A DNA stretch of 63,976 bases, filler included, from Octopus bimaculoides (lineage: Eukaryota): the NCBI RefSeq assembly GCF_001194135.2. It is 7 parts of 5 records of this genome, joined end to end, with 100 filler letters (N's around TTAATTAATTAA, not from the genome) between each part and the next. Parts side by side here need not be neighbours in the genome. Positions count along the whole stretch, not along the records: positions 31,887 to 36,507 come from NW_026398135.1; 6 more parts are not named here. One strand, 5' to 3'. Both the position numbers and the translations under genes were made by a program. Shown here piece after piece: positions 2,928 to 36,507 of this stretch (the stretch's first letter is position 1; each line of letters opens with the position of its first letter). The notes under the pieces were generated by a model, which saw only the letters and a program-made list of their open reading frames with translations, had not been told where the DNA came from and ran no database searches.

Positions 2928-5153
2928 NNNNNNNNNNNNNNNNNNNNNNNNNNNNNNNNNNNNNNNNNNNNNNNNNNNNNNNNNNNNNNNNNNNNNNNNN
3001 NNNNNNNNNNNNNNNNNNNNNNNNNNNNNNNNNNNNNNNNNNNNNNNNNNNNNNNNNNNNNNNNNNNNNNNNNNNNNNNNNNNNNNNNNNNNNNNNNNNN
3101 NNNNNNNNNNNNNNNNNNNNNNNNNNNNNNNNNNNNNNNNNNNNNNNNTATACGTTCATAGACACACTCAGACACTCTCTTTCACACACACACACATTAA
3201 TAGTCTTTCGAGGTTTAGACTCAGGATTCCATTGTTTAGTGCCGTTCACGGACAAATAAACAAAATATTGTTTTGAATAAGCTTCAATTTGATTGTCTAT
3301 TGAAATACCCACGCCTATATGCAGACTCTCCCACGAAAAGACACAAACACATACATAAAGTTAATCCAACACATGCACAATCACACCCCGCCAAACACAC
3401 ACAAACACGAACAAACTCACACATACATACTCAATTAAGCGTATTCACTGGCGCAAACACAAAACATTAAAACAGCTGAACGCCGTCCTGTAAAAATCTC
3501 AGTCTTTTAGTTAAGCAGTAATGGTTCACTCATGAATAACTGGAGACTGCAGGGCGGTTTCAGTTTCCACTTGATAATCATTCACCTAATGTTCAACTGC
3601 TTCTATCGTTAACGAAATCTATGAATGTCTCACAATTGTCTCCTCTTCAATTTCCAGCCTCTTGAATATGTTTAGACACCAACATTGCTTATATAAAATA
3701 TTAGTAGTAATTGAATAAGAGAAGGTGAAATGGTTGAGTTAACTGAGCGAGCGAATGCATGAAATATGGTAATTAGAGTAGTTATTTTCAGTTTTTGATT
3801 TTTCACTTTCTATTTGAATCAATAAAATAAGTGCCAGTTGTTGATTAATCGGTGATCTGCACCGATTGAACTCGTTTCTGATCAAAGGCGCTCCATCCAT
3901 GATCATCCATTATACTATTCAGTTATAATGCATGTGGTATTACACTATCTAATATGTTCTTCTTTTTAGAAGGTATAATACAGTTGAAGGGAGATTTATT
4001 AAGCAGTCAATCCAAATACAGAAAGCTTGTGGCTTCGAACAGTGTACTGAAGATGGAAAACAAATAGGCAAGACAGATGAGGATCTATACAAGAGAAACT
4101 GTAGAATAGAAAATTACCCTAGAACATGAATCGCCTAAGAAAACTAAATAGCCTTGCATAATTCATGAGACAAGAACTTAAAAATCCATAATGGAGACAT
4201 GGAGACGAATGAAAACCTTTGTACAAAATATGTGCAAGATGCTTATTCACGTGTAAGAATAGGTAGCATATCTATATGGATGGACAGTTGTGTGGCAGCA
4301 ATATTATTAGAAACCAAGAGCAGTGGATTGGTAGAAACTCTAGAGCATCCGCTAAAGTTCATTACATTATTTTCCTCAGCTCTGAATGTTCTGACCAGGA
4401 AAAATTTTGCGTTTCATGCTTTGCTGTCGATGAAATAAATTACCAGACAAGAACTGGAGTCGATATAATCGACTACGTCTTCCCTAAAAGTTTTAGGCCT
4501 TGTACCTAAATTACAGTAATATCAATAGTAGCTCAAACAGCATACATAGTTGTTTAGATTTAGGTTGTATGAAATGCATTCCAACCATGATTACCTAGTT
4601 TATTTTCTAAGAAAATTGTATCTTGGACTACATTATCTAATGTGATAATTTTTAAGAGAATGTAATTCTGAGCGATTTGGTTGCTATCTTTAACAGATCA
4701 TGTGTCATATAGAGACTCCGTCTTTGTGTATTCTAGACTTTCATTGGCATATTTGAAAATCAGATGCAGTAGCAGTAGAAGAAGCTATAAGCACATTTTA
4801 TAAATGTTACAGACTATATATAAAAATAAATGATTTAATGAAAGTTCACGTGAGCTGTTCATCTAAATTTATGCAAGCAGAAAAATCAAACTAATACAAA
4901 AAAGTAACAGCAAACAATAAAAAAGCAAAAACAGTTTCCAGCGAATAAGTTATAGCATGCCATATTCTAAATCATCCAAGTAAGAACAGGAATCACCATT
5001 TTCCAGTTTTATTTATTCCAACGTCTTCTTTTGTTTTTCAATAAGTTTGGTTGCATGTGTACACTCACACACAGACGTATATCTATGTGAATATTAGAAT
5101 TATCGAATCCAAGTCATTCATACAGTGTGAGTTGTCAAGAATGAAGCTTGATA

Positions 5154-5239
<86 letters not shown>

Positions 5240-8102
5240 CCGACCTATCTATCTATACTCACACATGTTAGTATATGTATATATACAATCATGTATATAT
5301 TTGTATATGTATATACATTCACACATTCGCACGTGTGTAAGTATATTATATATATGTATATATAAATACATACACACACACACACATATATATATGCATA
5401 TATGTATGTATATGCATGTATGTATATAATTTTGTGCACATGTATATTCAATATAAAATGTTTGAGCGTGTATATGTGTGTATGCGAATTTGTATTTAGT
5501 GCATCAGCGTTTGCACGTTACTATACATGTATATATAGAAATGTATCTCGAGGGTTATTTGTAGATAGATAGATATAGTTCGATTTTCGTGACAACCACT
5601 TTATGTGTGGTCATTCGTTCAGAAGGTGAAAGCAGATGCGCTCCTATTGAAGCAAATTGCTATCAGATATTACAATTCTTTTCCTGTTTAAAAGAGCTTC
5701 CATCATTTCCTCTTTGTCCTCCCCCTTCCACTCCATTTTACTACTCTCTTATTCGTTTTTGTATAATTTCTTTCTTTTATTAAAAGCTTGACTGCACAAC
5801 TTACTATAAACGGTCCATCTGATACAGGATGCTTCTTGCCTGACAACGGTCAAACAATTAACTTAATGGTCTAACGCACAGATTACCCATAAATTCACAA
5901 TCTAACCAACTAGCGAACAACTTCCCCAACATCTTCCATCGATCGTACTACACCCAACACTTTCACATGTATTTACAGCGAGCTTCCTGGTGTATCTAAC
6001 CAATATCCAGTGCGCATGAATTCCGCCATTTTGAATTGAGATATACCGAAGAAGAGTAAGTGATACAGATTAATGTAAGAATAGCGTACGCCAAACAGAA
6101 CATCGTCGTCTGGTTAGCGCAAATCCTTCCTATATAAAGAAAAATAGAAAAATAAAATAGAAAAACAAACCTGACACATTAACTTTCTATCTTTTTCTTC
6201 TGATAGTTGTTTCTTTATCAATTAAATACGAGGATTCTATAGTTGTAACACACATTTTACTGTTGTGTAAATCTCAGCAGTAATGCTTCGTACCGATAAA
6301 GAGATAAAGACCAAACCAATATAAATCTGATGATGTTTTGAGAACATTAAGAAACCAAAACGTTCGTTCTGTTTTGCCGAACTGCGACCAAAGTTTGATA
6401 CTTGGTCGACGCCGCGCTTACAACGTGTATAAATAAGCCGTATATATATGACATGATTCAACTCTTAACTTTTTCTGTAAAACACCGTTTCTTTCCCTCA
6501 TCAAAAATAAAATAAATATTTATATTGATATAATAAAATATGAAGCATCGAACGATGTATCGCTGTTAGCGAGATTTTGTAGCAGGTGCATTTCTTTATA
6601 TTTCTCTTATATAGCAATCGGCGCCCATCATTATTTTCCTGGGAATATAGCTCGCTTGAAGAATGGAAGCTGTCTTTAGTGTGTGTCCAACAGAAACAAT
6701 CCTACAAAATGCACACTAGGACAGATGATATTAAACCGGGCGACGAATTATGTCTACGACTCCATTTACGTATTTACTTTTTATTTCTCTCTCTAAAACC
6801 GCCTTGGTTAGTCTCAGATACTTTTGGACAATAAGGCATCTTATCAGAGGTTAATTTACCTCATAGATGTCCTCATAGACGCTGCCTATTATTTGACAGC
6901 TGTACCTTCTAAAATTAAAAAAAACAAACCCTTAGATTTAAATGCAGAAAAATATCCACTTCTTGGGAACGACAAAAATCAATACGATTTAAACATTAAT
7001 TTAGTGAAGTATTACATGATTCGGTGGCGGTAATAAATGGTTAAAAAACAGGTTCAGTTTTTTTTTTTTTTACCTTTTCACTGATCAAATATAAATGAGG
7101 ACGTATTGAAAACAATTGCTCAAGTGTCACGATAACAGAGCTAACTATAAAATACAACAAAGGAAAAAAATAAATAGAATTAAATCAGAGTTAAAAGAAA
7201 TAACATGATGTTACTTCTATCAGCCTCGTATAGTGTCATATATAAAAGAGTGAATTTCAATAAAAGAATCAAACCAAAGAGTAAAATTTGTCAAATGACA
7301 TAAATGCGTGTAGTGCGAGATGAAGTAAATTCTGACGCTTGGAACAGAACTCTTTTAAAAATATTTCAATAAGCATTGACTTTGACGCATGATTTTCTGT
7401 CCACTTCAAAACTGTTGATATTAGAAACATTCTAAATAAAAAGTAATGTAAAATGTTTCTACTTTGTACTACTCGAGTCAATGAGGGAGATTTTATATGT
7501 TACTTGACATGGTAGAAATAACAGCAAATTTTCACTCTAATCTTACATTGCTATGTTTTTGTTTGCTTATTCGTTTTTTAAAGAATTAATGTCTTTAATC
7601 CAGGGTCTACTCGATCAGGGCTAATGGGATGCTAAATAGCAACATTAGTTGCAATTCTACTTTATACGTCATAACCTCTCTATTTTAATGAGACGAAAAG
7701 CATGGGACAAGAAATCTAAGGAAAGTCGTAGCTTAAATATCCAACCAATAGTTCCATTCTAGAAACCAGTTTACAAATAAAAATAAAAGAAACACTTGCT
7801 GAAAATATCCGCCATTTAAATTGAATTCGCACAGAAGTTGTACGACTACAATTATTTGGTAATATACTTTGGTACAAAGAGAATGAAAGAGCCTGCAAGA
7901 TTGCATGTATGTCTGTATGATAAAAGAGTTTTCTTTACACTATATCTATTCTGGTTCGCCCTTAAAGCCCAGCACATTTGACAAACGTCTTCACCGTAGT
8001 TTCGAGTTGTTCAATACGTATTGAGTACAATATCGCCGGATGGTAATGCAAATACGCATTGCACAATGGCACGTAAACATTCTCATTTGGTCTCTGTCAC
8101 TT

Positions 8103-11531: not shown

Positions 11532-12429
11532 NNNNNNNNNNNNNNNNNNNNNNNNNNNNNNNNNNNNNNNNNNNNNNNNNNNNNNNNNNNNNNNNNNNNN
11601 NNNNNNNNNNNNNNNNNNNNNNNNNNNNNNNNNNNNNNNNNNNNNNNNNNNNNNNNNNNNNNNNNNNNNNNNNNNNNNNNNNNNNNNNNNNNNNNNNNNN
11701 NNNNNNNNNNNNNNNNNNNNNNNNNNNNNNNNNNNNNNNNNNNNNNNNNNNNNNNNNNNNNNNNNNNNNNNNNNNNNATATATATATGCATATATGTATT
11801 TGCAACTGCAGTTGTAGGTAGACAGATGTATGCGCAATAAATGCACAAGTATACATTTAAATACACACCACACCTACTCATTGATAAATATCCTTTTCTT
11901 AACTATTTACACAGCAATCCTCAAACATAATCTCGCATAAACTTTTACTATCTTTAAGTGTTTTTGTTTCTATACCCCAGCCCACACAAGCTGTATCATG
12001 ACTTGATAAATCACTCCCATATACATAGGCATATCTGCAGTACTTCAAAACGCAATTGGTGCAGTAATATAAGTGCTCTTTTCTTCAGCAGTAGAATCAA
12101 TATCTTTCTTGGCTTCATGCAATAGCCACCCACAACCGAGTAACACCCACAAGCCTCCCACTCATGCAGTGCAAATTCTCAGTCATTGCTGTGGCCTTCA
12201 GGAAAAGTACAACCCACGTATGTGTAAGGGAGCAGTGGATTATATTTAATATGCCTAGTCCTCCCTATGGTATCTCATGCGACAAACCACTGCATTTACT
12301 TAGTCAGGTAGCTGAATAATATATTCTTTCTCGGAAATTCCCATCACCAACATGGTATGCAATCAGCCATAAACGAAGCTTTAAGCAGCTGCTTAGTATG
12401 ATCTTGTTACCGAAGGAAAAGATACAAAA

Positions 12430-12476
12430 TAATAAAAATAATAATAATAGTAATAATGACAACAACAACAACAATT

Positions 12477-12526
<50 letters not shown>

Positions 12527-13093
12527 CATAATAATAATAATAATAATAATGATAATAATAATAATTGCCCTGATGCAGTACCACACAGTAACTTTCATAG
12601 CTTCTGATTTTAACTCATTGGAAATGTTATCATGTACATTGTTTCGTCTTTGTATAAAAGTTGGGCTACAGCAAATATTCTGCTCAATACCACAGATTTG
12701 CTTGTCAAATGTTTGACCTTAACCAGTTGTGCATGTCCCTTGGTGGCTGAAGATATGTGCGTCTCTGATCACGAGCAGAAGTAGTGCATGTGTTGAGAGA
12801 AGTCCTTTGGGGTTTAGATAATTCACCTCTGGAAACATGGGTGCTTCGTTCATCATCCTTAAACAACGTTTATTCAGGGTTCTTTTGAGAGGGATGGGCT
12901 ACTCGACCTGAAAAGAAATTCTAACTTGGCTCCACCTGCGAGGTCATGCGCTGTTTATCTTGATATAAAATCACAATGTTGCGCACATAGGGTTGTGATG
13001 CATGTGCCTGGTGTACCCTTACCAGACGGGTCTTTTACCCTAATATCACCTTGATGGCACGCACTGCTCTCTCACTCGGTAATAATAATAATC

Positions 13094-13142
<49 letters not shown>

Positions 13143-13310
13143 CGATGATGATGATGATGTTGATGATGATGATGATGATGATGACCATGATGATGATGCT
13201 CATGATGATGATGATCATGTTTATGACGGTGGTAGTGGTGGTTGCGTGATTATCTTTATTATTATTATTATTATTATTATTATGATGATGATGATGATGA
13301 TGAGGAGGAG
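12430..13310. repeat. Trinucleotide microsatellite blocks (AAT, AAC, GAT, ATT, AGG); window-wide there are also (AT)n, (AC)n, (AG)n, (ATCT)n, (ATAC)n runs, many beside gaps
   Basis: Direct reading, e.g. (ATCT)n 833-882 and 5153-5255, (AT)n 37070-37215, (AAG)n 61603-61660. Confidence 0.95.
12566..13079 (+). repeat. Interspersed repeat between (AAT)n tracts, probably the 3' UTR of a Dong-type LINE
   Basis: Complex, more GC-rich 510 bp flanked by AAT runs on both sides like the Dong fragments; family assignment is inference. Confidence 0.45.
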
Positions 13311-14054
13311 GAGGATGGTGATTTTTTAATAAGAATAATAAGAAAACGCACGTGCCAGCGATATATGCGTCATCTCTGGAAATTTAATTTAATTTTATAG
13401 ATCTGCAGAGCAAATCTTGATAAAAAAAAAAAATATATATATATATATTTCATCTCATATTTAAGGCTCCTCTATGCCACCTTTTGCATCATAGTAAATT
13501 GTAGTACGAGGATAAATGTTGAAATACATCAAAGTTATGACGTAAATGAGAAAGGAAAAGGCTGAGAATCAATGGAACAGATGGAAAAAATGAGAAAGAA
13601 AGAAATTCACAAACTCATAGAATCAAGAACTATGGATAGAACTGCCGATAGATTGCCAAACTGATAATGGCTCATCTACTCTCATCGGTAATACAGAGTG
13701 TTAATGGCTAAGTAACATGACCGTGAAAACGGTTATTTCACGGACCTCTATGTAGATATAATGTGGCGGCATCCTTTTATAAATAACAAGCATTACTGTT
13801 GAAAATTCTACCGTTACCTAGAAAATTATAAGACTGTTTGAAGCTTGTAATAGAAGTTTTCGTTTGAAATTGTATATTTGTATTGAAGCGTTTGAGTATT
13901 GAAATAAAGTAAAGCCGATGTAGGATGTACTGAAGATGCAGTCTTAGGAGAGAACATCTTTGAAATCTATATTCTTTGTTACACACTTGTCAGCCTTTGA
14001 TTACGAGTGGCTATTTATTATTTTTACTTAAAATAATAATAACATTAATTATAA

Positions 14055-14102
<48 letters not shown>

Positions 14103-14139
14103 CATCATCATCATCATTGATGTTGTTGTTGTTGTGTAA

Positions 14140-14266
14140 AGGCGACGAGCTGGCAGAATCGTTAGCAAGCCTGGCAAAATGTTTAGCGGCATTTCATCCG
14201 CCCTTACGCACTGGGTTCAAATTCCTCCGAGGTCGAATTTGCCTTTCATCGGGGTCGATCAATTAA
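14140..14266 (+). repeat. SINE family A copy, 3'-truncated
   Basis: ggcgacgagctggcagaatcgttagc..ccgaggtcga. Confidence 0.8.
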
Positions 14267-14330
14267 GTAGTGGTTAAAAACGCGGGCTACTAACCCCAAG
14301 ATTCCGAGTTCGATTCCAAGCAATGAGCTA
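14267..14330 (+). repeat. tRNA(Ile)-like SINE head fragment
   Basis: A box AGTGGTTA, B box GAGTTCGATTCC; GCTACTAACCCCAAG resembles GCTAATAACGCCAAG of tRNA-Ile(AAT); no acceptor stem. Confidence 0.55.
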
Positions 14331-14371
14331 AACAACAACAACAACAGCAACAACAACAACAATAATAATAA

Positions 14372-14625
14372 TAATCTAAAAACAGAAACAATTCCTATCA
14401 TAATAGGCGCCTTAGGTATGATAAAAAAATATTCAGACAAATACATAACAAAAACACCAGGACTTACAAATATATATAACATACAGAAAATTGCACTACT
14501 CGGCACTGCACACATCCTACGCAAAACACTTTCAATACAGCAACCATAAGAGCATCACAGCAAACCACAGCACATACCCAAGGCACCCAGAGCTGCGCTC
14601 GGTAGTGAAGTGAAAGCACGCTACA
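14372..14625 (+). mobile_element. R4/Dong-type 3' end, 5'-truncated, between (AAC/AAT)n tracts
   Basis: NLKTETIPIIIGALGMIKKYSDKYITKTPGLTNIYNIQKIALLGTAHILRKTLSI; near-identical reverse complement of 40600-40860. Confidence 0.85.
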
Positions 14626-14917
14626 ATAATAATGATAATAATAAATCTATTTGAAAATGATACCAGGCTTACCATCTCTACAGGAGGTGCAAAATATCGT
14701 GCTAACTGGAACGACTCATGTACTAAGAAGAGCATTATCGTTGTGAAAACAACATCCATTCATGATTTTTTTTTTTTTTTTTTTTNNNNNNNNNNNNNNN
14801 NNNNNNNNNNNNNNTTGCGTGTGTAAATTGGGAATGCATACAACGTTTCTCTGCCCTAGGTGTACGGAAAACACTCGGCGAGAAATGGGAAAAGATTTGA
14901 AGAAAGTAAAAAAAAAC

Positions 14918-14953
<36 letters not shown>

Positions 14954-15001
14954 TCGAAAAACACCTTAGGAATGAGAACCCAGGTTTGAAATTTCCCCAA
15001 G

Positions 15002-15045
15002 GCACCTGAAGAAGAGTTGAGGGTATATCAGCCGAAACGTTGTGT
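15002..15045 (+). ncRNA. Decayed minimal hammerhead-ribozyme-like fold in a PLE-type tail (tail about 14951-15145)
   Basis: GCAC-CTGAAGA-..GTTG..CAGC-C-GAAA-CGT-T-GTGT: intact core, stem I 4 bp (one G-U), imperfect stem II, palindromic AACGTT. Confidence 0.45.
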
Positions 15046-15850
15046 TAACAGCAAACAAGATGAAGACAAATATCCGTCGAATGTAAATAATGTAAATAAT
15101 GTACATCGTGTACATAATTCCTCATCTCTTAAATATAGAACTGTACTTCCATTTAGATATGGCACCTCCATTTAATATGTTAGATTGATCCAAAGTTCTT
15201 TGAAAGTCGCCTTGAATCACCCTACGTACCTACACTCATTTCGGGATCATGTCACATTATTTTATTTTAAAATCTTATGGCAATTATTGTTATTTATCTA
15301 TTTACTTCTTTATGAATGTGTAATTATTGCTTCGTTCATCTCACGCGTTCACTCAAAGTATGCTTTACCGCTTATAGCTTCTTAATGTTTTCATATGTAT
15401 TTTACGTATTATTTGTATAGCCTCCAACGTTATAGGCCCTTGCGGCCAATAAAATAAATCTTTATTTTTTTAAAAATCAGAAAAACATATGTTAAAAGAA
15501 GTCGGCAAAAAACAGTGAATGGCCGTATATCTTAATCACACTGTTTTTCGTTTACTTCTTAGTTTTCGTCAGATACTTACATTTTTATTGTCTTTGGATT
15601 TTCTCTTTTTTTATTGATACTTTTTTCACTGCATTTTGTTTTTATGTATCGTGACTGTTCTGAGACACCAGTAATGACTTTATAAATTTAACAATGTATT
15701 TTCTTGTATATATTTCCTTAAATAGTTTCTTATTGTTTGTTTCTTAAATGTTTCCATTTGTTATTTTTTGTATCATTTTAGTTGCTAGCGTTGTCATTAT
15801 TTTTGTTGTTGCTGCTGTTGTTGCTGTTGCTGTTGTTATTGTCATCGTCG

Positions 15851-15884
<34 letters not shown>

Positions 15885-17256
15885 AATCATTTTTTGTATT
15901 GTTATTGTTTTTATTTTCGTTATTATTTTCTGTTATCTCAGCTAATAAGTTCTACATAAACTACTATTCTGGAGATAATTGATTGGATAAGAGCGTAATC
16001 TCTCTCTCTTTTTTAAGCTACTAAACTGTTTAACTCTAAGCTTATAAGCATACGTGTATGTATGTATGTATTTATGTATGTATGTATGTATTATGCACGT
16101 ACGTACGTACGTATGTATATACGTTTGATTGTCTATATGTTTGTATGTATGTGCATAAACAAAGTACACTCACACAGAACATACAAATATACAGTGTGCG
16201 ATCACATGTATTTATATCTATGTATATCCAGCTCTATACATATAAATCATACTATGAAAAAAATCTATGTAATAAAGAAAAAAAAATATTAATACACATA
16301 AATATATAAGTACATAATTTGTATAAATAGATATTTAGAAATATACACTCACGTATACATACACACTGGTATGTAAACACGCTTACACAAATACATATAG
16401 AGATTTTTATAGAAATACACATTACCTGTATGAAATGCGAATACATATGCACGTATTTATACACAATCGCACGCAAGCACAGGTAGGTATACGTACGTAT
16501 ATACATAAGTTTAGCAGTACGCGTACGTACGCGTAAGGAACCGCGGAGACATAAAATACAAGAATATATAACTGAAACAATGATGAATTGCACATACACG
16601 CAAGTATTGAAATATTGTGTGCGCTCGTATGTTCGTTTGTGTGTGTTAGTGTTTGTGTATATGTGTGTGTGTGTTTATGTGTATGTGTATGTCTTGTGTG
16701 TGTATGTGTGTGTGTGTGTGTGTGTGTATGTCTGTGTGTGTGCTTGCATTAGCTTCCTTGATAAATAACTATAAATACTAGCCTGCCTAATGTTCAATGC
16801 GTATATATACACATATGTATACATATATATATGGAGAAAAATAAAACAAAATGCCAAAAGAAAAAAAAAAAATGGAACCGTCACTTAGCATGCGTGTTTA
16901 TATTTGTTTACATGACAAATTGCAAGTATCGACCTTGTAGCATATACGGAAACATTCACAGGTAAAAACATGCATGCAATACACACAGGCGCACACACAC
17001 ATACGCACACGCACACACTCGCACACACTCGCACAGAGACACACGTGTATGTGTGGTTGTAGTATTTTATGTCTTTCTGAATGGCGTGTAAATGAACCGG
17101 TGTGAGTTTGTTTATATCCCCATGCCTTGGCGTTTTGGCAATTAGTTTGAGTTCTGGACTTTGAAAACAAGTTGTGGAGTCGATTTGCTCGGCTAAAGCC
17201 TTCATGGCATTGTCCAAGTATGTCTGCGATCCACAGACTTAAGCTAGTAATTCATA

Positions 17257-17326
<70 letters not shown>

Positions 17327-18489
17327 TAATATATATATATACACATCTATTTTATATTAGTAAGTATTAATATTTCTGTATCATCTATATACGTATGTGT
17401 TTGAGTTTGTGTATGTGTATGAATATATACGCACATACACACACGCGCACACACACGCACACGCACATGCACACATGCAAACACACACACAAAAACACAC
17501 GCATATATATTTAGTTATATATGCAGAGCAACACACGCATGCACATTCCTATATTCATTGTACATTACCTGTCCGAATGCCATATGCACATATTTTATGC
17601 TGCAATGCCGAGTGGTTCAAGAAATAGGCTGACACATTCTATTGATTTTTAACATGGCTGTTTGAAAGCTGCAGTCGCCACTTGCAGTGTCACTAATTGC
17701 TCAATATTACAAATATAGAAGACACACACACCATCAACACAAGCAAAAAAGCAATCATGGAAGCCACTAATATGGTCATATAACAAGCTGAAAGTAATAA
17801 CCTCTTTAGCTTATATCCGAACTCTACCGTAATAGCAAATGAAAAACAGTAATAATACACTAAATGTTCTGGAAAATATATAGACGGGAGGTTCATTGCT
17901 GGAAGCCATTACCAGTATGCCTTCTCATTCAGGATTGACCTGGGTCGAAATAACGGTACGACTATAACAACCAATATTTCAATATTTGCGAATCGACACC
18001 AGTTATATGGAAAATAGTAAATTTGTAAGTGTAAATGAAGTTTGAAATGAGTCTCTGAAGTACTATATTTCACATGAACGCTTCAGGTGTCGTATTCTTC
18101 GCAATACCATTTTGTGGATGAATAAAATGTTTGCGTCTTTGAATAGTGTGTGACTGAAGTAATTCGTTCATTATAAAACGCATTGCACCGGGTGGCTTTC
18201 TATCATTTACTTAAAAATTATATAAGAGTGCACGTACATACATCATACATAGCTACGTAACTAAACACACACACACACACACACACATACATACATACAT
18301 ACAAACACACCCCCATATGTACGTATATAAGTCCGAGTGTGTGAGTGTGCATCACGTCTAGAATAAAGACCAGGTACTGCAATAGCTTGGGTTTCATTAA
18401 AAGCTGATCAAATGAGAAGGCCGTTGAAAAGCGATAAAAATGGCTGTGCTCCAGCATGTCCACAGCCCTTCTGCGGGCTGGAAAATATA

Positions 18490-31886: not shown

Positions 31887-32486
31887 CGTGAACGACGCTC
31901 CGACGTAGTCGAGTGTGAGAAGTTTCGCGGAAGAAAGAAGCATTGACAAATATATGTACAGATGAATCAAGTGAGAATGCAAGCTGTCAATTTAATAAAG
32001 GTTCAATTGCAAATCTGGAGAATTTAGTAACATCCTAACAGTATTGTTGAAATTGAAATATTCTATAATTGGTGACGAAATAATATTGTTTTAATGGTTC
32101 GCAAAAAATGGAAAGTATTAGTTAGTCAAGCTGAAAATCTTACAAAGATTACGATCAACGTGCTATGGAGAAATTGGTTTTGGTCATATTTATTGTTAAA
32201 TGCAATTACTGTATACTCAAATGAACTGATCACAGAATCCGTTTGAATTTGCCGTCCAAAGAAAATGATATTGAATGATGTAGCAATATTGGACAGGAGA
32301 AATTAATAAGTATGTGTGAGAACTGGTTTAAACTAAATAAAGTTGCCGGATTTTCCACAAAGAAATGTTTTCTTTGTCAGTGATTGATAGATATTGAGTG
32401 AACATGCGGGGACTGATGACAAATTTAGAAACAACGTTTGAAAAAGAATCTATGATTTAGGTACTTCTGTTAATAATAAAACTTAC

Positions 32487-32555
32487 GGGGTTTAGTTGTT
32501 GGTGGAGTTGATACAGTTGATGGAGTGAGTGGTGCCATTGTTGTTCTGATAGGGT
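32487..32555 (-). CDS. Cassette copy 1, exon D (69 bp): linker HPIRTTMAPLTPSTVSTPPTTKP
   Basis: Acceptor ccttctctgttgcag|, donor |gtaagt; phase 1-1. Confidence 0.85.
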
Positions 32556-32690
32556 CTGCAACAGAGAAGGGAAGGCAAAATATTGGATGGAAGGATCATT
32601 TAAATTTCGATGAAATTGTAAATTTATTACATGCAGTAGAAATCGATGTTAATGTATATAACGATGGAAAAGTTGATATTAACTGCTTAC

Positions 32691-32817
32691 GTTTACAGAG
32701 CTTTGCAGAGAGAGACACGAACATATCTTGTAATGGATGGCTTGGCAAAAGTTCAATTTCTACCAAGCTTTGACCATTATGTTGTGGAATGTCTATAGTT
32801 CGATCTGGAGTGGATGT
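32691..32817 (-). CDS. Cassette copy 1, exon C (127 bp): TSTPDRTIDIPQHNGQSLVEIELLPSHPLQDMFVSLSAKLCK
   Basis: Acceptor tttcatttattag|, donor |gtaagc; phase 0 to 1; ends in the closing Cys of the domain. Confidence 0.85.
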
Positions 32818-33049
32818 CTAATAAATGAAATGAAAATTTAATTGAAATAGTCTTCAGCTACATAGAAATTGTGAACATAAAGCAGTTTACATTTTCAAAG
32901 ATTCAAATTATACTATGAATATTATCGATTAAGTTTGCAACAAAAAATCGAATGTTTAAAATGTGACAACTTGGAGCGTTTGAACATTGTATTTTGTAAT
33001 TCGAAATGGTTTTGTGAATAGAACGAAGAAAACAACCGCTAGTGTATAC

Positions 33050-33309
33050 CTTGATTAGGATTTTTGCTGATGGACGGGATATGAAAACTGTATAGGACTT
33101 CACATTCTCGTGTCGAACAAGGCGAATTGAACCTCCGGCATCTAGGTTGGGGCCAATATCTAATGTGATAATCCTCGTGTCATTCGTATTAGTTCTCCAT
33201 GCAAAACCTGGTCTGATGTCACCGGGATTGCCAATTAACGGATTGAGAGAGATGGCTGTATCTGGGATGAAAGATTCATCATCCATCGCTTCTGATATGT
33301 CACACAACA
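33050..33309 (-). CDS. Cassette copy 1, exon B (260 bp): LCDISEAMDDESFIPDTAISLNPLIGNPGDIRPGFAWRTNTNDTRIITLDIGPNLDAGGSIRLVRHENVKSYTVFISRPSAKILIK, N-terminal part of discoidin/F5-8C-like domain
   Basis: Acceptor ttttctttgacag|, donor AAG|gtatac; phase 1 to 0. Motif spacing parallels F5/8 type C domains (C..M....IPD..I; AW; I.LDxG; V.SY.V). Partly overlaps ORF-track entry 32903-33325. Confidence 0.85.
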
Positions 33310-33428
33310 CTGTCAAAGAAAACAATCACCTCTTGTATAATGAGAAATTAAGTCAAACAGTGATTCTGTTGTATATGTGAAAGAAATGAAACAATAGATT
33401 GGCGAGAATTTGTATCCATATAACTCAT

Positions 33429-33491
33429 ATTGTGTGGTGGTGGATGGGCTTGGAGAAACTATTGAAGATCCCATTGCTGTGGCGGCAGGTT
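33429..33491 (-). CDS. Cassette exon A (63 bp): PTS linker (Q)PAATAMGSSIVSPSPSTTTQ; donor reads atgagt instead of gtgagt
   Basis: Acceptor ataatgcag|; 63 bp is phase 1-1 and in frame with D' upstream and B downstream; the donor dinucleotide is non-canonical. Confidence 0.6.
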
Positions 33492-33859
33492 CTGCATTAT
33501 AAATGACGTAATTATAAAATGAACTACAGCAACGTACATGATTTATCTTCAATAAATATGATGCAACTGTAGACTCATTTGCGGCGATATGAAGCGGACA
33601 ATTAAAAGCAATTGTTGATGCGTTGTTTTGAAGGGTAGGAAATATCTGTCGTCACCGCGTTAGAATAACAAGTTGTTTGTTTAAGTCGCGTCTTTTTTGA
33701 GCACGCTTTGATTGTAGAATTGTTGTCTTTTTTATATTGTTCGTTATTGGTATTGTTTTTATTAGTGTTAAAAATTGCTTACGCGACTTGCGCGTAATTG
33801 TTTTCGGCTGCTGTTTTTGTACCCATTGGTGGGTGAAAGAATGTAGCTTTCATTATGGA

Positions 33860-34790
33860 AAACTACGCAAAGACCGCTGTTGTCTGAGGAGGTACGCCGT
33901 TGGAAGGGCAGCATATCAAATTAAACATAGAAGAAACAATAAGAAGCGTACAATGTGTTCAAAGAGAGAGAGAGACGCGATAAAGCTAGTCCCTCTGGAG
34001 GAAACAGTCATGGTGTACCGCACGGTAGCGGTCGCCACCAACAGAATAGAAGTCCTATCAGTGGATGCTGTGGAAGTATGTCTGGGATCCCGAATAAAAA
34101 ATGCAATATTTTAAGCAGAAGAAGCAGAAAACACGGCACGGTGCAGGTGAGGTTTGCCACGAATGAAGAGGCGGCTTCCTATTCCACCACTATTCTACGT
34201 TCAGACAAAGTAGCGCTGCTGCCCACGTATAGAGGCGGACGCAGTGTTCGAATTCGTATAGGAGGAGTGCTACCAGACATAAAGTCAGAGTGGTTGGTGG
34301 CAGCTGTTCTGGCTGTCACCGAGGAGAATCCTGAATTGGGACCATTAGGAAGAACGACCATGTTGAACTGGTGGTGATGCGGTGTCGAGATGTGGTTCTT
34401 TGCCTCTTTCGAAGACATACAAGGAATCCCCTACCAAATAGAGATTACGGGAAAAAATTCACTCAAAGTAATTGTTGAGGATCGTCGACCCAATTGTTAA
34501 GGATATGGAATGAAAAGGCATTTGGTGTCACAATTCTCCAAGCACGAACATCCTCAGAGTGAGAAGATTGTGGAAAAAGAACAAGAAGTGGAAACTGAAG
34601 AAAAAATCGAAACAAAGAAAGACGGAGATGGCAAAAGCGATACAAAGTGCGTCAGAGACACAGAAGAAGAAGAAGTAAACACAGAGGAAGACATAACGAA
34701 AGCGGCAAAGGAGGGGAGTGACGGGTTTGTCAGTGCCAAAAGTTAAAAAAAGGCGAAATCAAGCGTGCATTCGTAAGGACCAGCAGCAGA
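33860..34790 (+). mobile_element. Tx1-like ORF1 remnant (no ORF2) inside the intron of the cassette gene, antisense to it
   Basis: RKHGTVQVRFATNEEA..LLPTYRGGRSVRIRIGGV parallels KFGTIEVRFKVEEEA..LIPSYRSQCLARVRVINV at about 42890; decayed VIVEDRRPNC knuckle lead-in; stops and frameshifts. Confidence 0.65.
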
Positions 34791-35692
34791 AACAGAGAGG
34801 ACGCCCCCAAAAAGGAAATAATCATGCTGATTTCTTACATGAAAATTAAACTAGTTTACATATAATGTCGTGAAAAGAATACGAAAGATGGTGATGAGGT
34901 TTATGTGTGAAGGCGGATGGTGAAGGAGGGGCTGAATTTTAAAGAAAATTCAGAATATAAGGTTTAGAGATATTGGAGAGATTGAGAATTATTATCCATA
35001 TTAAGACGAAAGAAACGAAAACAACGTCGTTTTTATAGCTGAAGGTCGTTTTGAATGATGAATTATTTGTGTGAAAAATTTTGGAAATGCTGTGTGGACG
35101 TCATACGTGAACATCCGTACGTGAACGACGCTCCGACGTAGTCAAGTGTGAGAAGTTTCGCTGAAGAAATAAGCGATGGCAAATATATGTACAGATGAAT
35201 CAAATGAGAATGCAAGTTGTCAATTGAAAACAAGGACAATTGAGAAACATCTTAACAGTATATAACACAAAAATATCGTCGAAAATGTGAAATATTTAGC
35301 AGTTAGGGGCGAGAGAATATTGTTGTAACAGTTCGAAAATAAAAATAACATTAGAATTTCGTCAACTTAAACAGCTTGCAATCCATTACGATCAATGTGC
35401 AATGGAGAAATTGGTTTTGGTCACATTTATTGCTAAATGTAATGACTGTATACTCAAATGAACTGATCACAGAAATATCTCTGAAAATGATGTTGAATAA
35501 GGTAGCAATATATGACACGATGTGTGAGACATGGTTTAAATTAAATAAACGTGCCGGAGTTTTCACAAAGAAACTCTTTTGTGTCAGTGATTAATGTAAA
35601 TTGAGTGAACATGCGATGAGTGATCACGACTTGAGAAAGAATGTTAACACACATTTATGCTTAAGGGCAAGTATGTTAATAGTAAAACTCAC

Positions 35693-35761
35693 GTGGTGTA
35701 GTTGTCGGTTGAGTTGATGCGGTTGCTGAAGTGACTGGTGCTATTGTTGTGGCAATAGGGT
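35693..35761 (-). CDS. Cassette copy 2, exon D' (69 bp): Pro/Thr/Ser linker HPIATTIAPVTSATASTQPTTTP
   Basis: Acceptor ttgcag|, donor |gtgagt; phase 1-1; the preceding intron is 135 bp in both copies. Confidence 0.85.
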
Positions 35762-35896
35762 CTGCAATGTCAAATGGAAGGCAAAATATTCAATGCGAGG
35801 ATCATTTAAATTTACATGAAATTGTAACTAGATTGCATGCGGTAGAAATCGATGTAAATGTATTTAATGATGGGAAATTTGATATAAGCTGCTCAC

Positions 35897-36023
35897 GTTT
35901 GCATAGCTTTGCAGAGACAGATACCAACATATCTTGTGTTGGATCGATTGGGAAAAGTTCAATTTCTACCACAGTTTGACCATTATGTTGTGGAATGGCA
36001 ACTGGTCGTTCTGGAGAGGATTC
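35897..36023 (-). CDS. Cassette copy 2, exon C' (127 bp): ESSPERPVAIPQHNGQTVVEIELFPIDPTQDMLVSVSAKLCK
   Basis: Acceptor ctattag|, donor |gtgagc; phase 0 to 1; same length as exon C; stop-free. Confidence 0.85.
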
Positions 36024-36416
36024 CTAATAGATGAAAGGTAAAATAAACTGAAATAGTCTAGAACAGCAAGAAAAGATGAACTGTATAATTGGTGATTGTT
36101 TTTAGATATCATCAGAAAAAGGTAAATGAAAATCATTAGTTTGTATGTTCCTAAAAAAAATATTTTTTGGTACAATTAGGTAAAGAAAAAAAACTGATAT
36201 AAATATGAAGAGCAGAAAAACGCTGAAAATTATGCCGTTCGTCTTTTCAATGTTTGAAAGTACCCTATAATATGTAAGAATGACTATTATCGATTAATTT
36301 ATGAAAATATATCGAACAATTAATATAGGAAATATCATGAGCTATCAAATAGTGAATGGTGTGATTCAAAACATTGCTGTAAATAGAATGACAAAGAAAG
36401 GGCCACGAGGGAATAC

Positions 36417-36507
36417 CTGGATTTGTGTTTTTGCAGATGGATGTGATATGGAAACATTATAGGATTTCACGTTGTCGTGTTGAACAAGGCGAATTATAGC
36501 GCCAAAA
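36417..36507 (-). CDS. Cassette copy 2, exon B' (3' part, 5' part lost in gap): discoidin/F5-8C-like domain, FGAIIRLVQHDNVKSYNVSISHPSAKTQIQ
   Basis: Open frame homologous to exon B of copy 1 (IRLVRHENVKSYTVFISRPSAK); ends CAG|gtattc, phase 0, at the same position as the copy 1 donor. Confidence 0.8.

What the first reader, a model, noticed from the sequence alone, without database searches (positions are those of the whole stretch)
32487..36507. Unannotated modular gene: tandem exon cassettes encoding Cys-bracketed discoidin-like domains joined by mucin-type PTS linkers
Seen: seven minus-strand exons (B' 36417-36507, C', D', A, B, C, D) splice into one stop-free frame with matched phases (B 1-0, C 0-1, linkers 1-1). 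Exon C (127 bp), exon D (69 bp) and the C-D intron (135 bp) have identical lengths in both copies. The roughly 130-aa domain runs LCDISEAMDD..AKLCK. Established: F5/8 type C (discoidin) domains have N- and C-terminal Cys, an IPD..I start, AW, LQIDLG and VTSY motifs, and each has a counterpart here. Inference: this is a secreted or surface mucin-like protein with a string of divergent carbohydrate/lipid-binding modules. Each whole module is phase 1-1, so modules can be duplicated or skipped freely, like oyster bindin F-lectin repeats. It could be a combinatorial recognition or adhesion protein (gamete, skin/sucker, mucus immunity). This is the best candidate for an undescribed system in the window.
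Basis: partly seen in the sequence, partly recalled or inferred. Interest (0 to 1): 0.8.

Follow-up and report, generated by a model that had tools for sequence, protein, structure and literature searches.

The report
Octopus mucin-like discoidin-fold repeat gene
This is a real piece of an Octopus bimaculoides gene, already in NCBI as an uncharacterised partial gene model, that encodes a string of ~130-residue sugar-binding-type beta-sandwich domains joined by short mucin-like linkers; no database names this domain family, and its relatives sit in mucin / von Willebrand-type secreted proteins.

Summary
The piece is a whole 4621-bp unplaced scaffold of Octopus bimaculoides. The seven minus-strand exons, their lengths (C 127, D 69, C-D intron 135 in both copies), their phases and one open 268-codon frame are all there. 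There are two corrections.

- Exon A has an AT donor, not GT.
- The locus is not unannotated.

AlphaFold2 gives pLDDT 92, and Foldseek returns only galactose-binding-domain-like jelly rolls: APC10, CBM32, neuropilin b1/b2. Membership of the Pfam F5/8 type C family is not met. No Pfam or PDB sequence hit exists, and the profile-profile signal is weak but in a consistent register (P about 0.004-0.02).

About 20 relatives form an unnamed family. A chromosomal octopus paralogue cluster alternates PTS exons with modules of the same exon phases. It lies between VWD-C8-TIL-LDLa and TSP1-TIL gene models. Distant relatives carry TIL, VWC, PTS repeats and 3-4 such domains in one reading frame.

The best reading is a fragment of a secreted mucin-type glycoprotein. 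Ligand, tissue and the rest of the gene are unknown. Interest is moderate.

The parts
36417..36507 (-). Exon B' (3' 91 nt of the first module's large exon; cut by the scaffold edge); ends in phase 0, donor GT
   Evidence: It is 77% identical to the 3' end of exon B with no gaps. It is not part of NCBI's model.
35897..36023 (-). Exon C' (127 nt, phase 0-1): C-terminal third of module 1, ending ..SAKLCK
   Evidence: It is the first exon of NCBI protein P0001.
35693..35761 (-). Exon D' (69 nt, phase 1-1): P/T/S-rich linker HPIATTIAPVTSATASTQPTTTP
   Evidence: P+T+S is 0.61.
33429..33491 (-). Exon A (63 nt, phase 1-1): second linker exon, QPAATAMGSSIVSPSPSTTTQ; donor is AT instead of GT, so probably a dead or skipped exon in this copy
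   Evidence: NCBI's model skips it. The homologous exon in L001 (668-730) is 63 nt with a GT donor.
33050..33309 (-). Exon B (260 nt, phase 1-0): N-terminal two thirds of module 2, LLCDISEAMDDESFIPD...AKILIK
   Evidence: The family's conserved residues D17, I20, P24, R33, P34, W38, G59, N69 and V70 lie here.
32691..32817 (-). Exon C (127 nt, phase 0-1): C-terminal third of module 2, TSTPDR...SAKLCK
32487..32555 (-). Exon D (69 nt, phase 1-1): P/T/S-rich linker HPIRTTMAPLTPSTVSTPPTTKP; the gene runs on beyond the scaffold
   Evidence: P+T+S is 0.65.
31887..32486 (-). Start of the intron after exon D; 78% identical to the intron after D' (35120-35692), so the repeat unit continues past the scaffold end

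Best explanation
The piece is an internal fragment of an Octopus bimaculoides gene for a secreted, O-glycosylated, beads-on-a-string glycoprotein of the mucin / von Willebrand-type matrix class.

Each repeat unit (about 3.2 kb) carries two short linker exons (A and D, phase 1-1) and a domain split over exons B (1-0) and C (0-1). A whole unit, or a linker exon alone, can therefore be duplicated, lost or skipped without breaking the frame.

B plus C encode a 129-residue beta-jelly-roll of the galactose-binding-domain-like (discoidin / CBM32 / APC10) fold. The domain has just two cysteines, one at each end. They most likely form the N-to-C disulfide that closes F5/8 type C domains.

The linkers (23 residues, or 44 if exon A is used) are P/T/S-rich and probably O-glycosylated stalks.

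By analogy with the fold, the globular modules would bind a glycan or other surface ligand through the loops at one end of the barrel. Many copies in a row would give multivalent cross-linking or adhesion in mucus or matrix. That is the role CysD domains play in vertebrate gel-forming mucins and SRCR domains play in DMBT1.

Shown: exons, phases, open frame, gene model, predicted fold, the family and its architectures elsewhere. Inferred: secretion, glycosylation, the disulfide, ligand binding, and that the unseen rest of this gene carries VWD/TIL-type domains.
For: - Gene structure and open frame.
- Identity to the NCBI Gnomon protein LOC128251500.
- Purifying selection on the domain but not the linkers. 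dN/dS for B+C is 0.36 (unit 2 vs L001) and 0.59-0.64 (unit 1 vs the others). For D it is 0.86-2.0. Exons have no indels in three copies, while the B-C intron and the intron after D do.
- Fold. Two independent AF2 models, for the window module (pLDDT 92.1, pTM 0.87) and a 22%-identical relative (pLDDT 95.3, pTM 0.90). Foldseek on the window-module model returns APC10, CBM32, neuropilin b1b2, GH29 CBM32, IFT25 and F-lectin, with E 1e-4 to 1e-3 and TM 0.5-0.65.
- Weak full-length profile alignment to F5/8C with both Cys aligned. Score 24.1 (P 0.0037) and 23.6 (P 0.0049). None of 120 shuffles reaches it.
- Family. About 20 true relatives were found in 1.84 billion representatives.
- Transcript evidence. 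One relative (P0004) comes from a source labelled merc/ERR1712142, which to my knowledge is a marine metatranscriptome. It runs straight across the B|C junction at the predicted place.
- Context in octopus. P0011 = XP_052821907.1 (LOC106867630) on chromosome record CM046602.1 has three modules with the same B 1-0 / C 0-1 phases, alternating with PTS exons. The gene model just upstream (TIL, VWD, C8, TIL, LDLa) ends inside module 1's exon B. The next model downstream has TSP1 and TIL.
- Context in distant relatives. Single ORFs of 860, 900 and 1738 aa carry TIL x2, VWC (weak), PTS repeats and 3-4 of these domains. L002 has a PTS ORF followed by tandem single-exon domains.
Against: - The scaffold holds no signal peptide, no VWD/TIL/TSP1 and no long PTS repeat. 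Its linkers are only 23-44 aa and TRF finds nothing.
- The window module is only 47-50% identical to the chromosomal paralogues and shares no DNA with that locus. The mucin/VWD context is therefore borrowed from relatives.
- Exons are no better conserved than introns in plain identity (77-83% vs 68-82%).
- Exon A has lost its donor, and dN/dS between the two units is 0.64, so some decay is possible.
- No binding residues can be named.
- The evidence behind the Gnomon model is not visible to me.
- The Cys-Cys distance in the model could not be read out.
Confidence: 0.7

Rival explanations
1. A stand-alone multivalent lectin or agglutinin. It would be only a signal peptide plus a variable string of these modules and linkers, with no VWD/TIL/TSP1 polymerising ends. 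It would work as a soluble pattern-recognition or agglutinating protein, like DMBT1 or oyster bindin, with module number varied by duplication or exon skipping.
For: The scaffold shows only modules and linkers. The phase 1-1 symmetry allows variable copy number, and the NCBI model already skips one linker exon. The window gene is a distinct paralogue of the chromosomal cluster (47-50% identity). L005 shows near-identical tandem units, so copy number is in flux in this family.
Against: Every relative whose wider architecture could be seen is joined to TIL/VWC, or adjoins VWD-C8-TIL, and PTS repeats. Neither end of the window gene is available, so this cannot be excluded.
Confidence: 0.2
2. A decaying duplicate or assembly leftover. 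The unplaced scaffold would hold a non-functional, partly degraded copy of a module array: a pseudogene fragment or a collapsed or alternative haplotype piece. The gene model would then be a prediction artefact.
For: It is an unplaced 4.6-kb scaffold. Exon A's donor is mutated to AT. A 1.2-kb foreign block is inserted in the D'-A intron. Exon identity is about the same as intron identity. dN/dS between the units is 0.64.
Against: All frames are open over 268 codons (P about 2e-7 by composition). The other splice sites are intact. There are no exon indels in three copies, and dN/dS is 0.36 against L001. The module folds with high confidence. Losing one phase 1-1 linker exon is harmless.
Confidence: 0.08
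3. A gamete-recognition or sucker/skin combinatorial recognition protein, whose isoform diversity comes from module skipping.
Against: There is no expression, polymorphism or isoform evidence of any kind. The linkers, not the binding domain, carry the high dN/dS. The relatives' architectures point to matrix or mucus proteins.
Confidence: 0.02

Closest known systems
F5/8 type C (discoidin, FA58C; Pfam PF00754) domains, e.g. neuropilin b1/b2, factor VIII C1/C2, lactadherin C2
   Same: The predicted jelly-roll fold is the same. There is one Cys at each end of the domain. hhalign places the family's invariant R and W on the invariant R and W of F5/8C, and aligns IPD..I with I.D.QIT, I.IDIG with WLQVDLG, and NVK.Y.V with YV..F.I.
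   Different: There is no HMMER or Pfam match for any member. The hhalign probability is only 2-9%. The module is about 20 residues shorter (129 vs about 150), with shorter loops where F5/8C has its ligand-binding spikes. It is split over two exons.
CBM32 carbohydrate-binding modules and the APC10/DOC domain (other galactose-binding-domain-like families)
   Same: They are the top Foldseek hits, with scores equal to or better than neuropilin: 4ui9_L, 4a41, 4zz5 and 6tr3, TM 0.52-0.61.
   Different: They are bacterial enzyme appendages or intracellular subunits. They share no sequence similarity, have no terminal Cys pair and have no PTS context.
CysD domains of vertebrate gel-forming mucins (MUC2, MUC5AC/B) - own knowledge
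   Same: Small non-glycosylated globular domains that interrupt PTS sequence in VWD-type secreted polymers. Their proposed role is non-covalent cross-linking.
   Different: CysD is a different, cysteine-rich fold of about 110 aa and 10 Cys. Here the knot is a two-Cys jelly roll.
DMBT1 / salivary agglutinin / gp340 (SRCR domains separated by short Ser/Thr/Pro-rich SIDs; copy-number variable; PMC5435793, PMC9038570)
   Same: Beads-on-a-string layout of about 110-130-aa binding domains and about 20-aa PTS spacers, encoded by separate symmetric exons. Tandem units change in number.
   Different: The domain fold differs (SRCR). DMBT1 has CUB and ZP domains at its C-terminal end.
SCO-spondin and mollusc SCO-spondin-like / hemolectin-like mucus proteins (PMC8487547; limpet adhesive mucus, PMC7333891)
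   Same: SCO-spondin combines VWD, LDLrA, TIL, TSP1 and one FA5/8C domain (PMC8487547). The octopus paralogue cluster lies between a TIL-VWD-C8-TIL-LDLa model and a TSP1-TIL model. Limpet pedal mucus contains SCO-spondin-like VWD-C8-TIL-LDLrA proteins and proteins with galactose-binding-superfamily domains (PMC7333891).
   Different: SCO-spondin has a single canonical FA5/8C and no PTS-linked array. Whether the three octopus models are one gene is unproven, because that locus has 4751 N. The window gene's own flanks are unknown.
Oyster bindin F-lectin repeats
   Same: Tandem, phase-symmetric lectin-fold repeats whose number can vary.
   Different: F-lectin is a different family of the same superfamily. 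Bindin is a sperm acrosomal protein with no PTS linkers. No reproductive link is shown here.

Membership tests
F5/8 type C (discoidin) domain family, Pfam PF00754 | Significant match to the family HMM or to member sequences | tested here: not met
   There is no F5_F8_type_C hit at E<=10 for the window module, the 268-aa product or any of 24 family members. The family profile finds no F5/8C chain among 177,635 PDB sequences at E<=10, although neuropilin, FV, FVIII, lactadherin and DDR2 are in that library.
F5/8 type C (discoidin) domain family, Pfam PF00754 | Profile-profile similarity in a consistent register | tested here: inconclusive
   hhalign against a 5-sequence F5/8C alignment, with sequences verified against PDB, gives:
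- score 24.1, P 0.0037, probability 8.9%
- score 23.6, P 0.0049, 141 columns from end to end
- score 20.4, P 0.019 with a 44-sequence profile

None of 120 shuffled controls reaches 24.06 (mean 11.5). An unrelated Cys-bracketed domain scores 12.
F5/8 type C (discoidin) domain family, Pfam PF00754 | Distorted beta-jelly-roll (galactose-binding-domain-like) fold | tested here: met
   AF2 pLDDT 92.1 and pTM 0.87, nearly all beta. Foldseek PDB probability is 1.00 to neuropilin b1b2 (2orx, TM 0.65), CBM32 and APC10. The fold is shared by the whole superfamily, so this does not single out F5/8C.
F5/8 type C (discoidin) domain family, Pfam PF00754 | Disulfide between a Cys at the N-terminus and a Cys at the C-terminus of the domain | tested here: inconclusive
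   There are exactly two Cys per module, at residues 3 and 128. Both are conserved in every full-length relative, and both are aligned to the F5/8C terminal Cys. The bond itself, or the Cys-Cys distance in the model, could not be read with these tools.
F5/8 type C (discoidin) domain family, Pfam PF00754 | Ligand (lipid, glycan or peptide) binding through loops at one end of the barrel | not testable with these tools
   This needs binding assays or a complex structure.
Mucin-type (PTS) glycoprotein | Pro/Thr/Ser-rich sequence between globular domains | tested here: met
   Linkers D', A and D have 61%, 57% and 65% P+T+S, against 24% in the module.
Mucin-type (PTS) glycoprotein | Long tandem-repeat PTS domains | tested here: not met
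   Linkers in the window are only 21-23 aa per exon, and TRF finds no tandem repeats. Long PTS stretches do occur in relatives: P0011/P0036 have more than 100 aa, and L008 has several hundred aa of TPSGTTVSG-type repeats.
Mucin-type (PTS) glycoprotein | Signal peptide / secretion and dense O-glycosylation | not testable with these tools
   The 5' end of the gene is outside the scaffold. Glycosylation needs experiment.
Gel-forming mucin / VWF-type polymer (VWD-C8-TIL, VWC, CTCK) | VWD, C8, TIL, VWC or CTCK domains in the same polypeptide | tested here: inconclusive
   There are none in the window, because the scaffold is too short. In the octopus paralogue locus, the upstream model with TIL, VWD, C8, TIL and LDLa ends by reading through module 1's exon B (L004 2509-2847). 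In L007, L009 and L008, TIL (above the Pfam cut-off) and VWC (below it) lie in the same ORF as 3-4 domains.
SCO-spondin | VWD + LDLrA + alternating TSP1/TIL + one FA5/8C + CTCK in one giant protein (PMC8487547) | tested here: inconclusive
   The flanks of the paralogue cluster carry VWD/C8/TIL/LDLa(weak) upstream and TSP_1/TSP1_spondin/TIL downstream. They are separate gene models in a gap-ridden region (4751 N). I could not retrieve the flanking proteins. Nothing is known for the window gene itself.

The most novel reading that the evidence does not exclude
These modules would define an unnamed, strongly diverged branch of the discoidin / galactose-binding fold. In this reading, invertebrates use it as the globular knot between PTS stretches of mucin-type polymers, in the place that CysD holds in vertebrate mucins.

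In octopus the array may have arisen by amplifying the single FA5/8C slot of a SCO-spondin-like gene and adding O-glycosylated linker exons. That would give a copy-number-plastic, multivalent adhesive or microbe-binding component of cephalopod mucus.
Probability: 0.25. Interest if true: 0.55.

Novelty: new variant of a known kind. Interest (0 to 1): 0.38.

Why it matters
Cephalopod mucus, skin and sucker secretions are poorly characterised at the molecular level. The genes concerned are repetitive and fall into assembly gaps: this copy is an orphan 4.6-kb scaffold, and the chromosomal paralogue locus has 15% N and is split into several gene models.

This finding gives three things.
- A clean domain definition. 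It is about 130 aa with two Cys. R33, W38 and V70 are invariant, and D17, I20, P24, P34, G59 and N69 nearly so. There is a 24-44-sequence seed alignment and two high-confidence models, for a family with no Pfam entry.
- A recurrent architecture, PTS plus discoidin-fold module, joined to TIL/VWC/VWD. This widens the known ways of building mucin-type polymers.
- A testable link between mollusc SCO-spondin-like adhesive mucus proteins and lectin-fold repeats.

It is not a new kind of system. The fold, the modular exon logic and the protein class are all familiar.

Tried and rejected
- Pfam and PDB sequence searches with the single module, the 268-aa product, all 24 family members and the family profile found nothing meaningful.
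- In the exhaustive HMMER search, the long hits P0008, P0022-24, P0027 and P0028 are repeat-driven false positives: TPR, PKD and low-complexity repeat proteins.
- The word-indexed protein search is lossy. It missed P0011, and it missed the 826-aa upstream protein even when queried with that protein's own C-terminus. I could therefore not name the VWD-bearing neighbour.
- Enlarging the family profile to 44 sequences did not strengthen the F5/8C signal.
- 'Domain X', the other Cys-bracketed module in L008 and L009, is not detectably related.
- The GC-rich insertion's ORFs have no Pfam hit, with or without bridging stops. They have no match in the other loci.
- Rfam and TRF find nothing on the piece. 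The bacterial promoter/terminator scan is irrelevant for a eukaryote.
- The 93%-conserved 90-nt intronic block has no stable RNA fold, with z from -1.4 to +0.35.
- Literature searches for the run accession, and for cephalopod gel-forming mucins or discoidin in octopus mucus, gave nothing specific.
- A metagenome scan with the broad alignment A5 was rejected as too diverse. The narrower A6 worked.

Full report
**What the piece is.** Places 31887-36507 are 4621 bases. The only public protein identical to its translation is NCBI 'uncharacterized protein LOC128251500, partial [Octopus bimaculoides]' (P0001, 217 aa). That protein is carried on a contig of exactly 4621 bp. The piece is therefore a whole unplaced scaffold of the California two-spot octopus, and the gene runs off both ends.

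**The observation.**
- The exons are B' 36417-36507, C' 35897-36023, D' 35693-35761, A 33429-33491, B 33050-33309, C 32691-32817 and D 32487-32555.
- All have polypyrimidine-AG acceptors. All but A have GT donors.
- Joined, they give one open frame of 268 codons. Base composition alone would give that with P about 2e-7.
- The phases are as stated: B 1-0, C 0-1, and A and D 1-1.
- Exon C (127), exon D (69) and the C-D intron (135) have the same lengths in both copies.
- The two units are a diverged tandem duplication, spaced 3206-3367 bp, with blocks 73-93% identical.

**Two corrections to the observation.**
- Exon A is followed by ATGAGT, not GTGAGT. The next GT lies 4 nt further on and would shift the frame, so in this copy A is most likely skipped.
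- The locus is not unannotated.

**A third copy.** It lies on a Logan contig (L001, run SRR11869389, 74-77% identical in DNA; species unknown).
- It has A 63 nt with a normal GT donor, B 260, C 127 and D 69.
- Its A-B intron is 119 nt and its C-D intron 135 nt, the same lengths as in the window.

**Is it under selection?**
- Plain identity between the two window units is no higher in exons (77-83%) than in introns (68-82%).
- The exons carry no indels in any of the three copies. The B-C intron and the intron after D do.
- Nei-Gojobori dN/dS for the domain exons is 0.36 (unit 2 vs L001) and 0.59-0.64 (unit 1 vs the others).
- The linker exon D gives 0.86-2.0.
- So the domain is constrained and the linker is free to change apart from its composition.

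**What the domain is.**
- The 129-131-aa module has no Pfam match and no PDB sequence match.
- An exhaustive HMMER search of 1.84 billion representatives found 28 hits. About 20 are real.
- Most real hits are single exon-B-type ORFs from raw assemblies.
- The rest are a 309-aa octopus protein (P0011), a 542-aa JGI protein with three domains after a Cys-rich stretch (P0015), and P0004. P0004's source is labelled merc/ERR1712142, which to my knowledge is a marine metatranscriptome. It runs uninterrupted across the B|C junction exactly where the window's intron is removed.
- A 24-sequence alignment (A3) shows R33, W38 and V70 invariant. D17, I20, P24, P34, G59 and N69 are nearly so.
- With that alignment AlphaFold2 gives pLDDT 92.1 and pTM 0.87, almost all beta.
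- A second model, of a 22%-identical relative, gives pLDDT 95.3 and pTM 0.90.

**Fold assignment.** Foldseek against the PDB returns only galactose-binding-domain-like jelly rolls, with E 1e-4 to 1e-3 and TM 0.5-0.65:
- APC10
- CBM32 modules
- neuropilin-1/2 b1b2
- GH29 fucosidase CBM32
- IFT25
- F-lectin

**Is it a discoidin (F5/8 type C) domain in the family sense?**
- By HMMER, no. None of the 24 members touches PF00754 even at E<=10.
- The family profile finds no F5/8C chain in the PDB.
- I then built a small F5/8C alignment: neuropilin-1 b1 and b2, factor VIII C1 and C2, and lactadherin C2.
- The results were score 24.1 with P 0.0037, and score 23.6 with P 0.0049 over 141 columns from end to end.
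- In the alignment the first Cys falls on the first Cys and the last Cys on the last Cys. In both runs DIRP falls on ARL, GW on (N)AW, I.I..G on WLQVDLG and NVK.Y.V on YV..F.I.
- None of 120 column- or block-shuffled controls reached the real score (mean 11.5, sd 2.6, max 20.9). An unrelated Cys-bracketed domain scored 12.
- Against this, the hhalign probability is only 2-9%. Enlarging the profile to 44 sequences lowered the score to 20.4.
- I conclude the fold is the same, and remote homology to F5/8C is plausible but unproven. The family is its own sequence family, about 20 residues shorter than canonical discoidin domains.

**Context in octopus.**
- P0011 is XP_052821907.1 (LOC106867630) on chromosome record CM046602.1.
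- The 31-kb locus (L004) holds three modules, 47-50% identical in protein to the window's.
- Each module is split B|C with the same phases, 1-0 and 0-1.
- Each is preceded by a PTS exon, and the third is followed by a long PTS exon that runs into an assembly gap.
- The locus has 4751 N and retroelement debris.
- The gene model immediately upstream (826 aa; TIL, VWD, C8, TIL, weak LDLa) ends at L004:2847. That is the stop reached by reading through the donor of module 1's exon B.
- The next model downstream carries TSP_1, TSP1_spondin and TIL.
- An older model of LOC106867630 (P0036) even joins the PTS region to an exon inside that downstream model.
- So the three models are probably fragments of one large VWD/TIL/TSP1 gene with a PTS-plus-module centre. 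This is inference, and I could not retrieve the neighbours by search.

**Context in the literature.**
- The combination VWD, LDLrA, TIL and TSP1 plus one FA5/8C is the make-up of SCO-spondin (PMC8487547).
- Limpet adhesive pedal mucus contains SCO-spondin-like VWD-C8-TIL-LDLrA proteins, and other proteins with galactose-binding-superfamily domains (PMC7333891).

**Context in distant relatives.** A scan of JGI metagenome contigs gave three contigs with long uninterrupted ORFs.
- L007 (860 aa) and L009 (900 aa) have two TIL domains (above Pfam's cut-off) and a VWC (below it). After those come a short PTS stretch and three of these domains.
- L008 (1738 aa, open at both ends) has three rounds of a different Cys-bracketed domain plus long TPSGTTVSG-type PTS repeats. 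TIL and VWC follow, and then four of these domains with His-rich spacers.
- L002 has a PTS ORF followed by tandem single-exon domains.
- An ENA contig (L005) has near-identical 2.07-kb tandem units of B and C exons, which shows recent unit duplication.
- Wherever the wider architecture is visible, the family sits in mucin / von Willebrand-type secreted proteins.

**Best explanation.**
- The window is an internal fragment of such a gene. The product is a string of two-Cys jelly-roll modules held apart by short, probably O-glycosylated P/T/S stalks. The linkers are 57-65% P+T+S, against 24% in the module.
- It is encoded by phase-symmetric units that can be duplicated, lost or skipped in frame.
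- The modules most likely act as multivalent binding or cross-linking knots, as the fold and the company they keep suggest.
- Secretion, glycosylation, the disulfide and ligand binding are inferred, not shown.

**Rivals.**
- A stand-alone agglutinin or lectin without polymerising ends. This cannot be excluded, because the gene's ends are missing.
- A decaying copy. The dead donor of exon A, a 1.2-kb insertion and an unplaced scaffold point that way. The open frames, intact sites and dN/dS of 0.36 argue against it.

**Novelty and interest.**
- The gene models exist in NCBI but are uncharacterised.
- The domain family has no Pfam entry, no solved structure and, as far as my searches went, no paper.
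- The fold, the exon logic and the protein class are all familiar.
- I rate it a new variant of a known kind and of moderate interest.

Noticed in passing
window 33570-34810 (ORFs on the + strand: 33955-34377, 34390-34500, 34510-34746): A block of about 1.2 kb with GC 0.45-0.5, against 0.30-0.38 around it, lies inside the D'-A intron. It is absent from the homologous intron of L001 (106 nt there against 1246 nt here). Its broken + strand ORFs read ...GTVQVRFATNEEAA...IEITGKNSLKVIVEDRRPNC*GYGMKRHLVSQF..., followed by a Glu/Lys-rich tail. This looks like a decayed retroelement gag-like gene (RNA-binding domain plus a broken CCHC knuckle). No Pfam hit supports that.
   Followed up: partly
window 32556-32690 and 35762-35896; L001 1432-1566; also window 33310-33428 and L001 731-849: The C-D intron is exactly 135 nt in all three copies. 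It is 81.5% identical with no gaps between the two window copies, and a conserved in-frame stop (..KFK*) follows read-through from exon C. The A-B intron is exactly 119 nt in both the window and L001. The B-C intron varies (393, 232 and 195 nt). This could be chance for short introns or a length constraint.
   Followed up: partly
window 32148-32237 and 35385-35474; L001 25-95: A 90-nt intronic block is 93% identical between the two units, higher than the exons (77-83%). The same block occurs in L001 in the opposite orientation relative to the gene. It has no significant RNA fold (z from -1.4 to +0.35) and no Rfam hit. It may be a small mobile-element fragment.
   Followed up: partly
L004 (CM046602.1:7748395-7779607, O. 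bimaculoides), whole locus: The chromosomal paralogue region has 4751 N in 31 kb, plus retroelement ORFs (integrase- and RT-like, about 3670-5480 and 16430-17950). Its three adjacent same-strand gene models look like fragments of one large VWD/TIL - PTS/module - TSP1/TIL gene. The upstream model ends by reading through an exon-B donor.
   Followed up: partly
L008 2-2100 and L009 22-687: A second Cys-bracketed domain of about 120 aa (PC[ML][TQ].M.NQGV.P... to ...V.ACxxx) alternates with long PTS tandem repeats upstream of the TIL/VWC region. It has no Pfam hit and no hhalign similarity to the octopus family (score 12). It is another unnamed mucin-interrupting domain.
   Followed up: partly
L005 2068-2304 / 2618-2737 and 4141-4377 / 4692-4811 (ENA ERZ21867824 ctg118745l): Two neighbouring 2.07-kb units have almost identical B and C exons, and no PTS exons between modules. 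This points to very recent unit duplication, or gene conversion, in another (unidentified) genome. A 1494-aa minus-strand ORF at 12166-16650 is probably a transposon.
   Followed up: no
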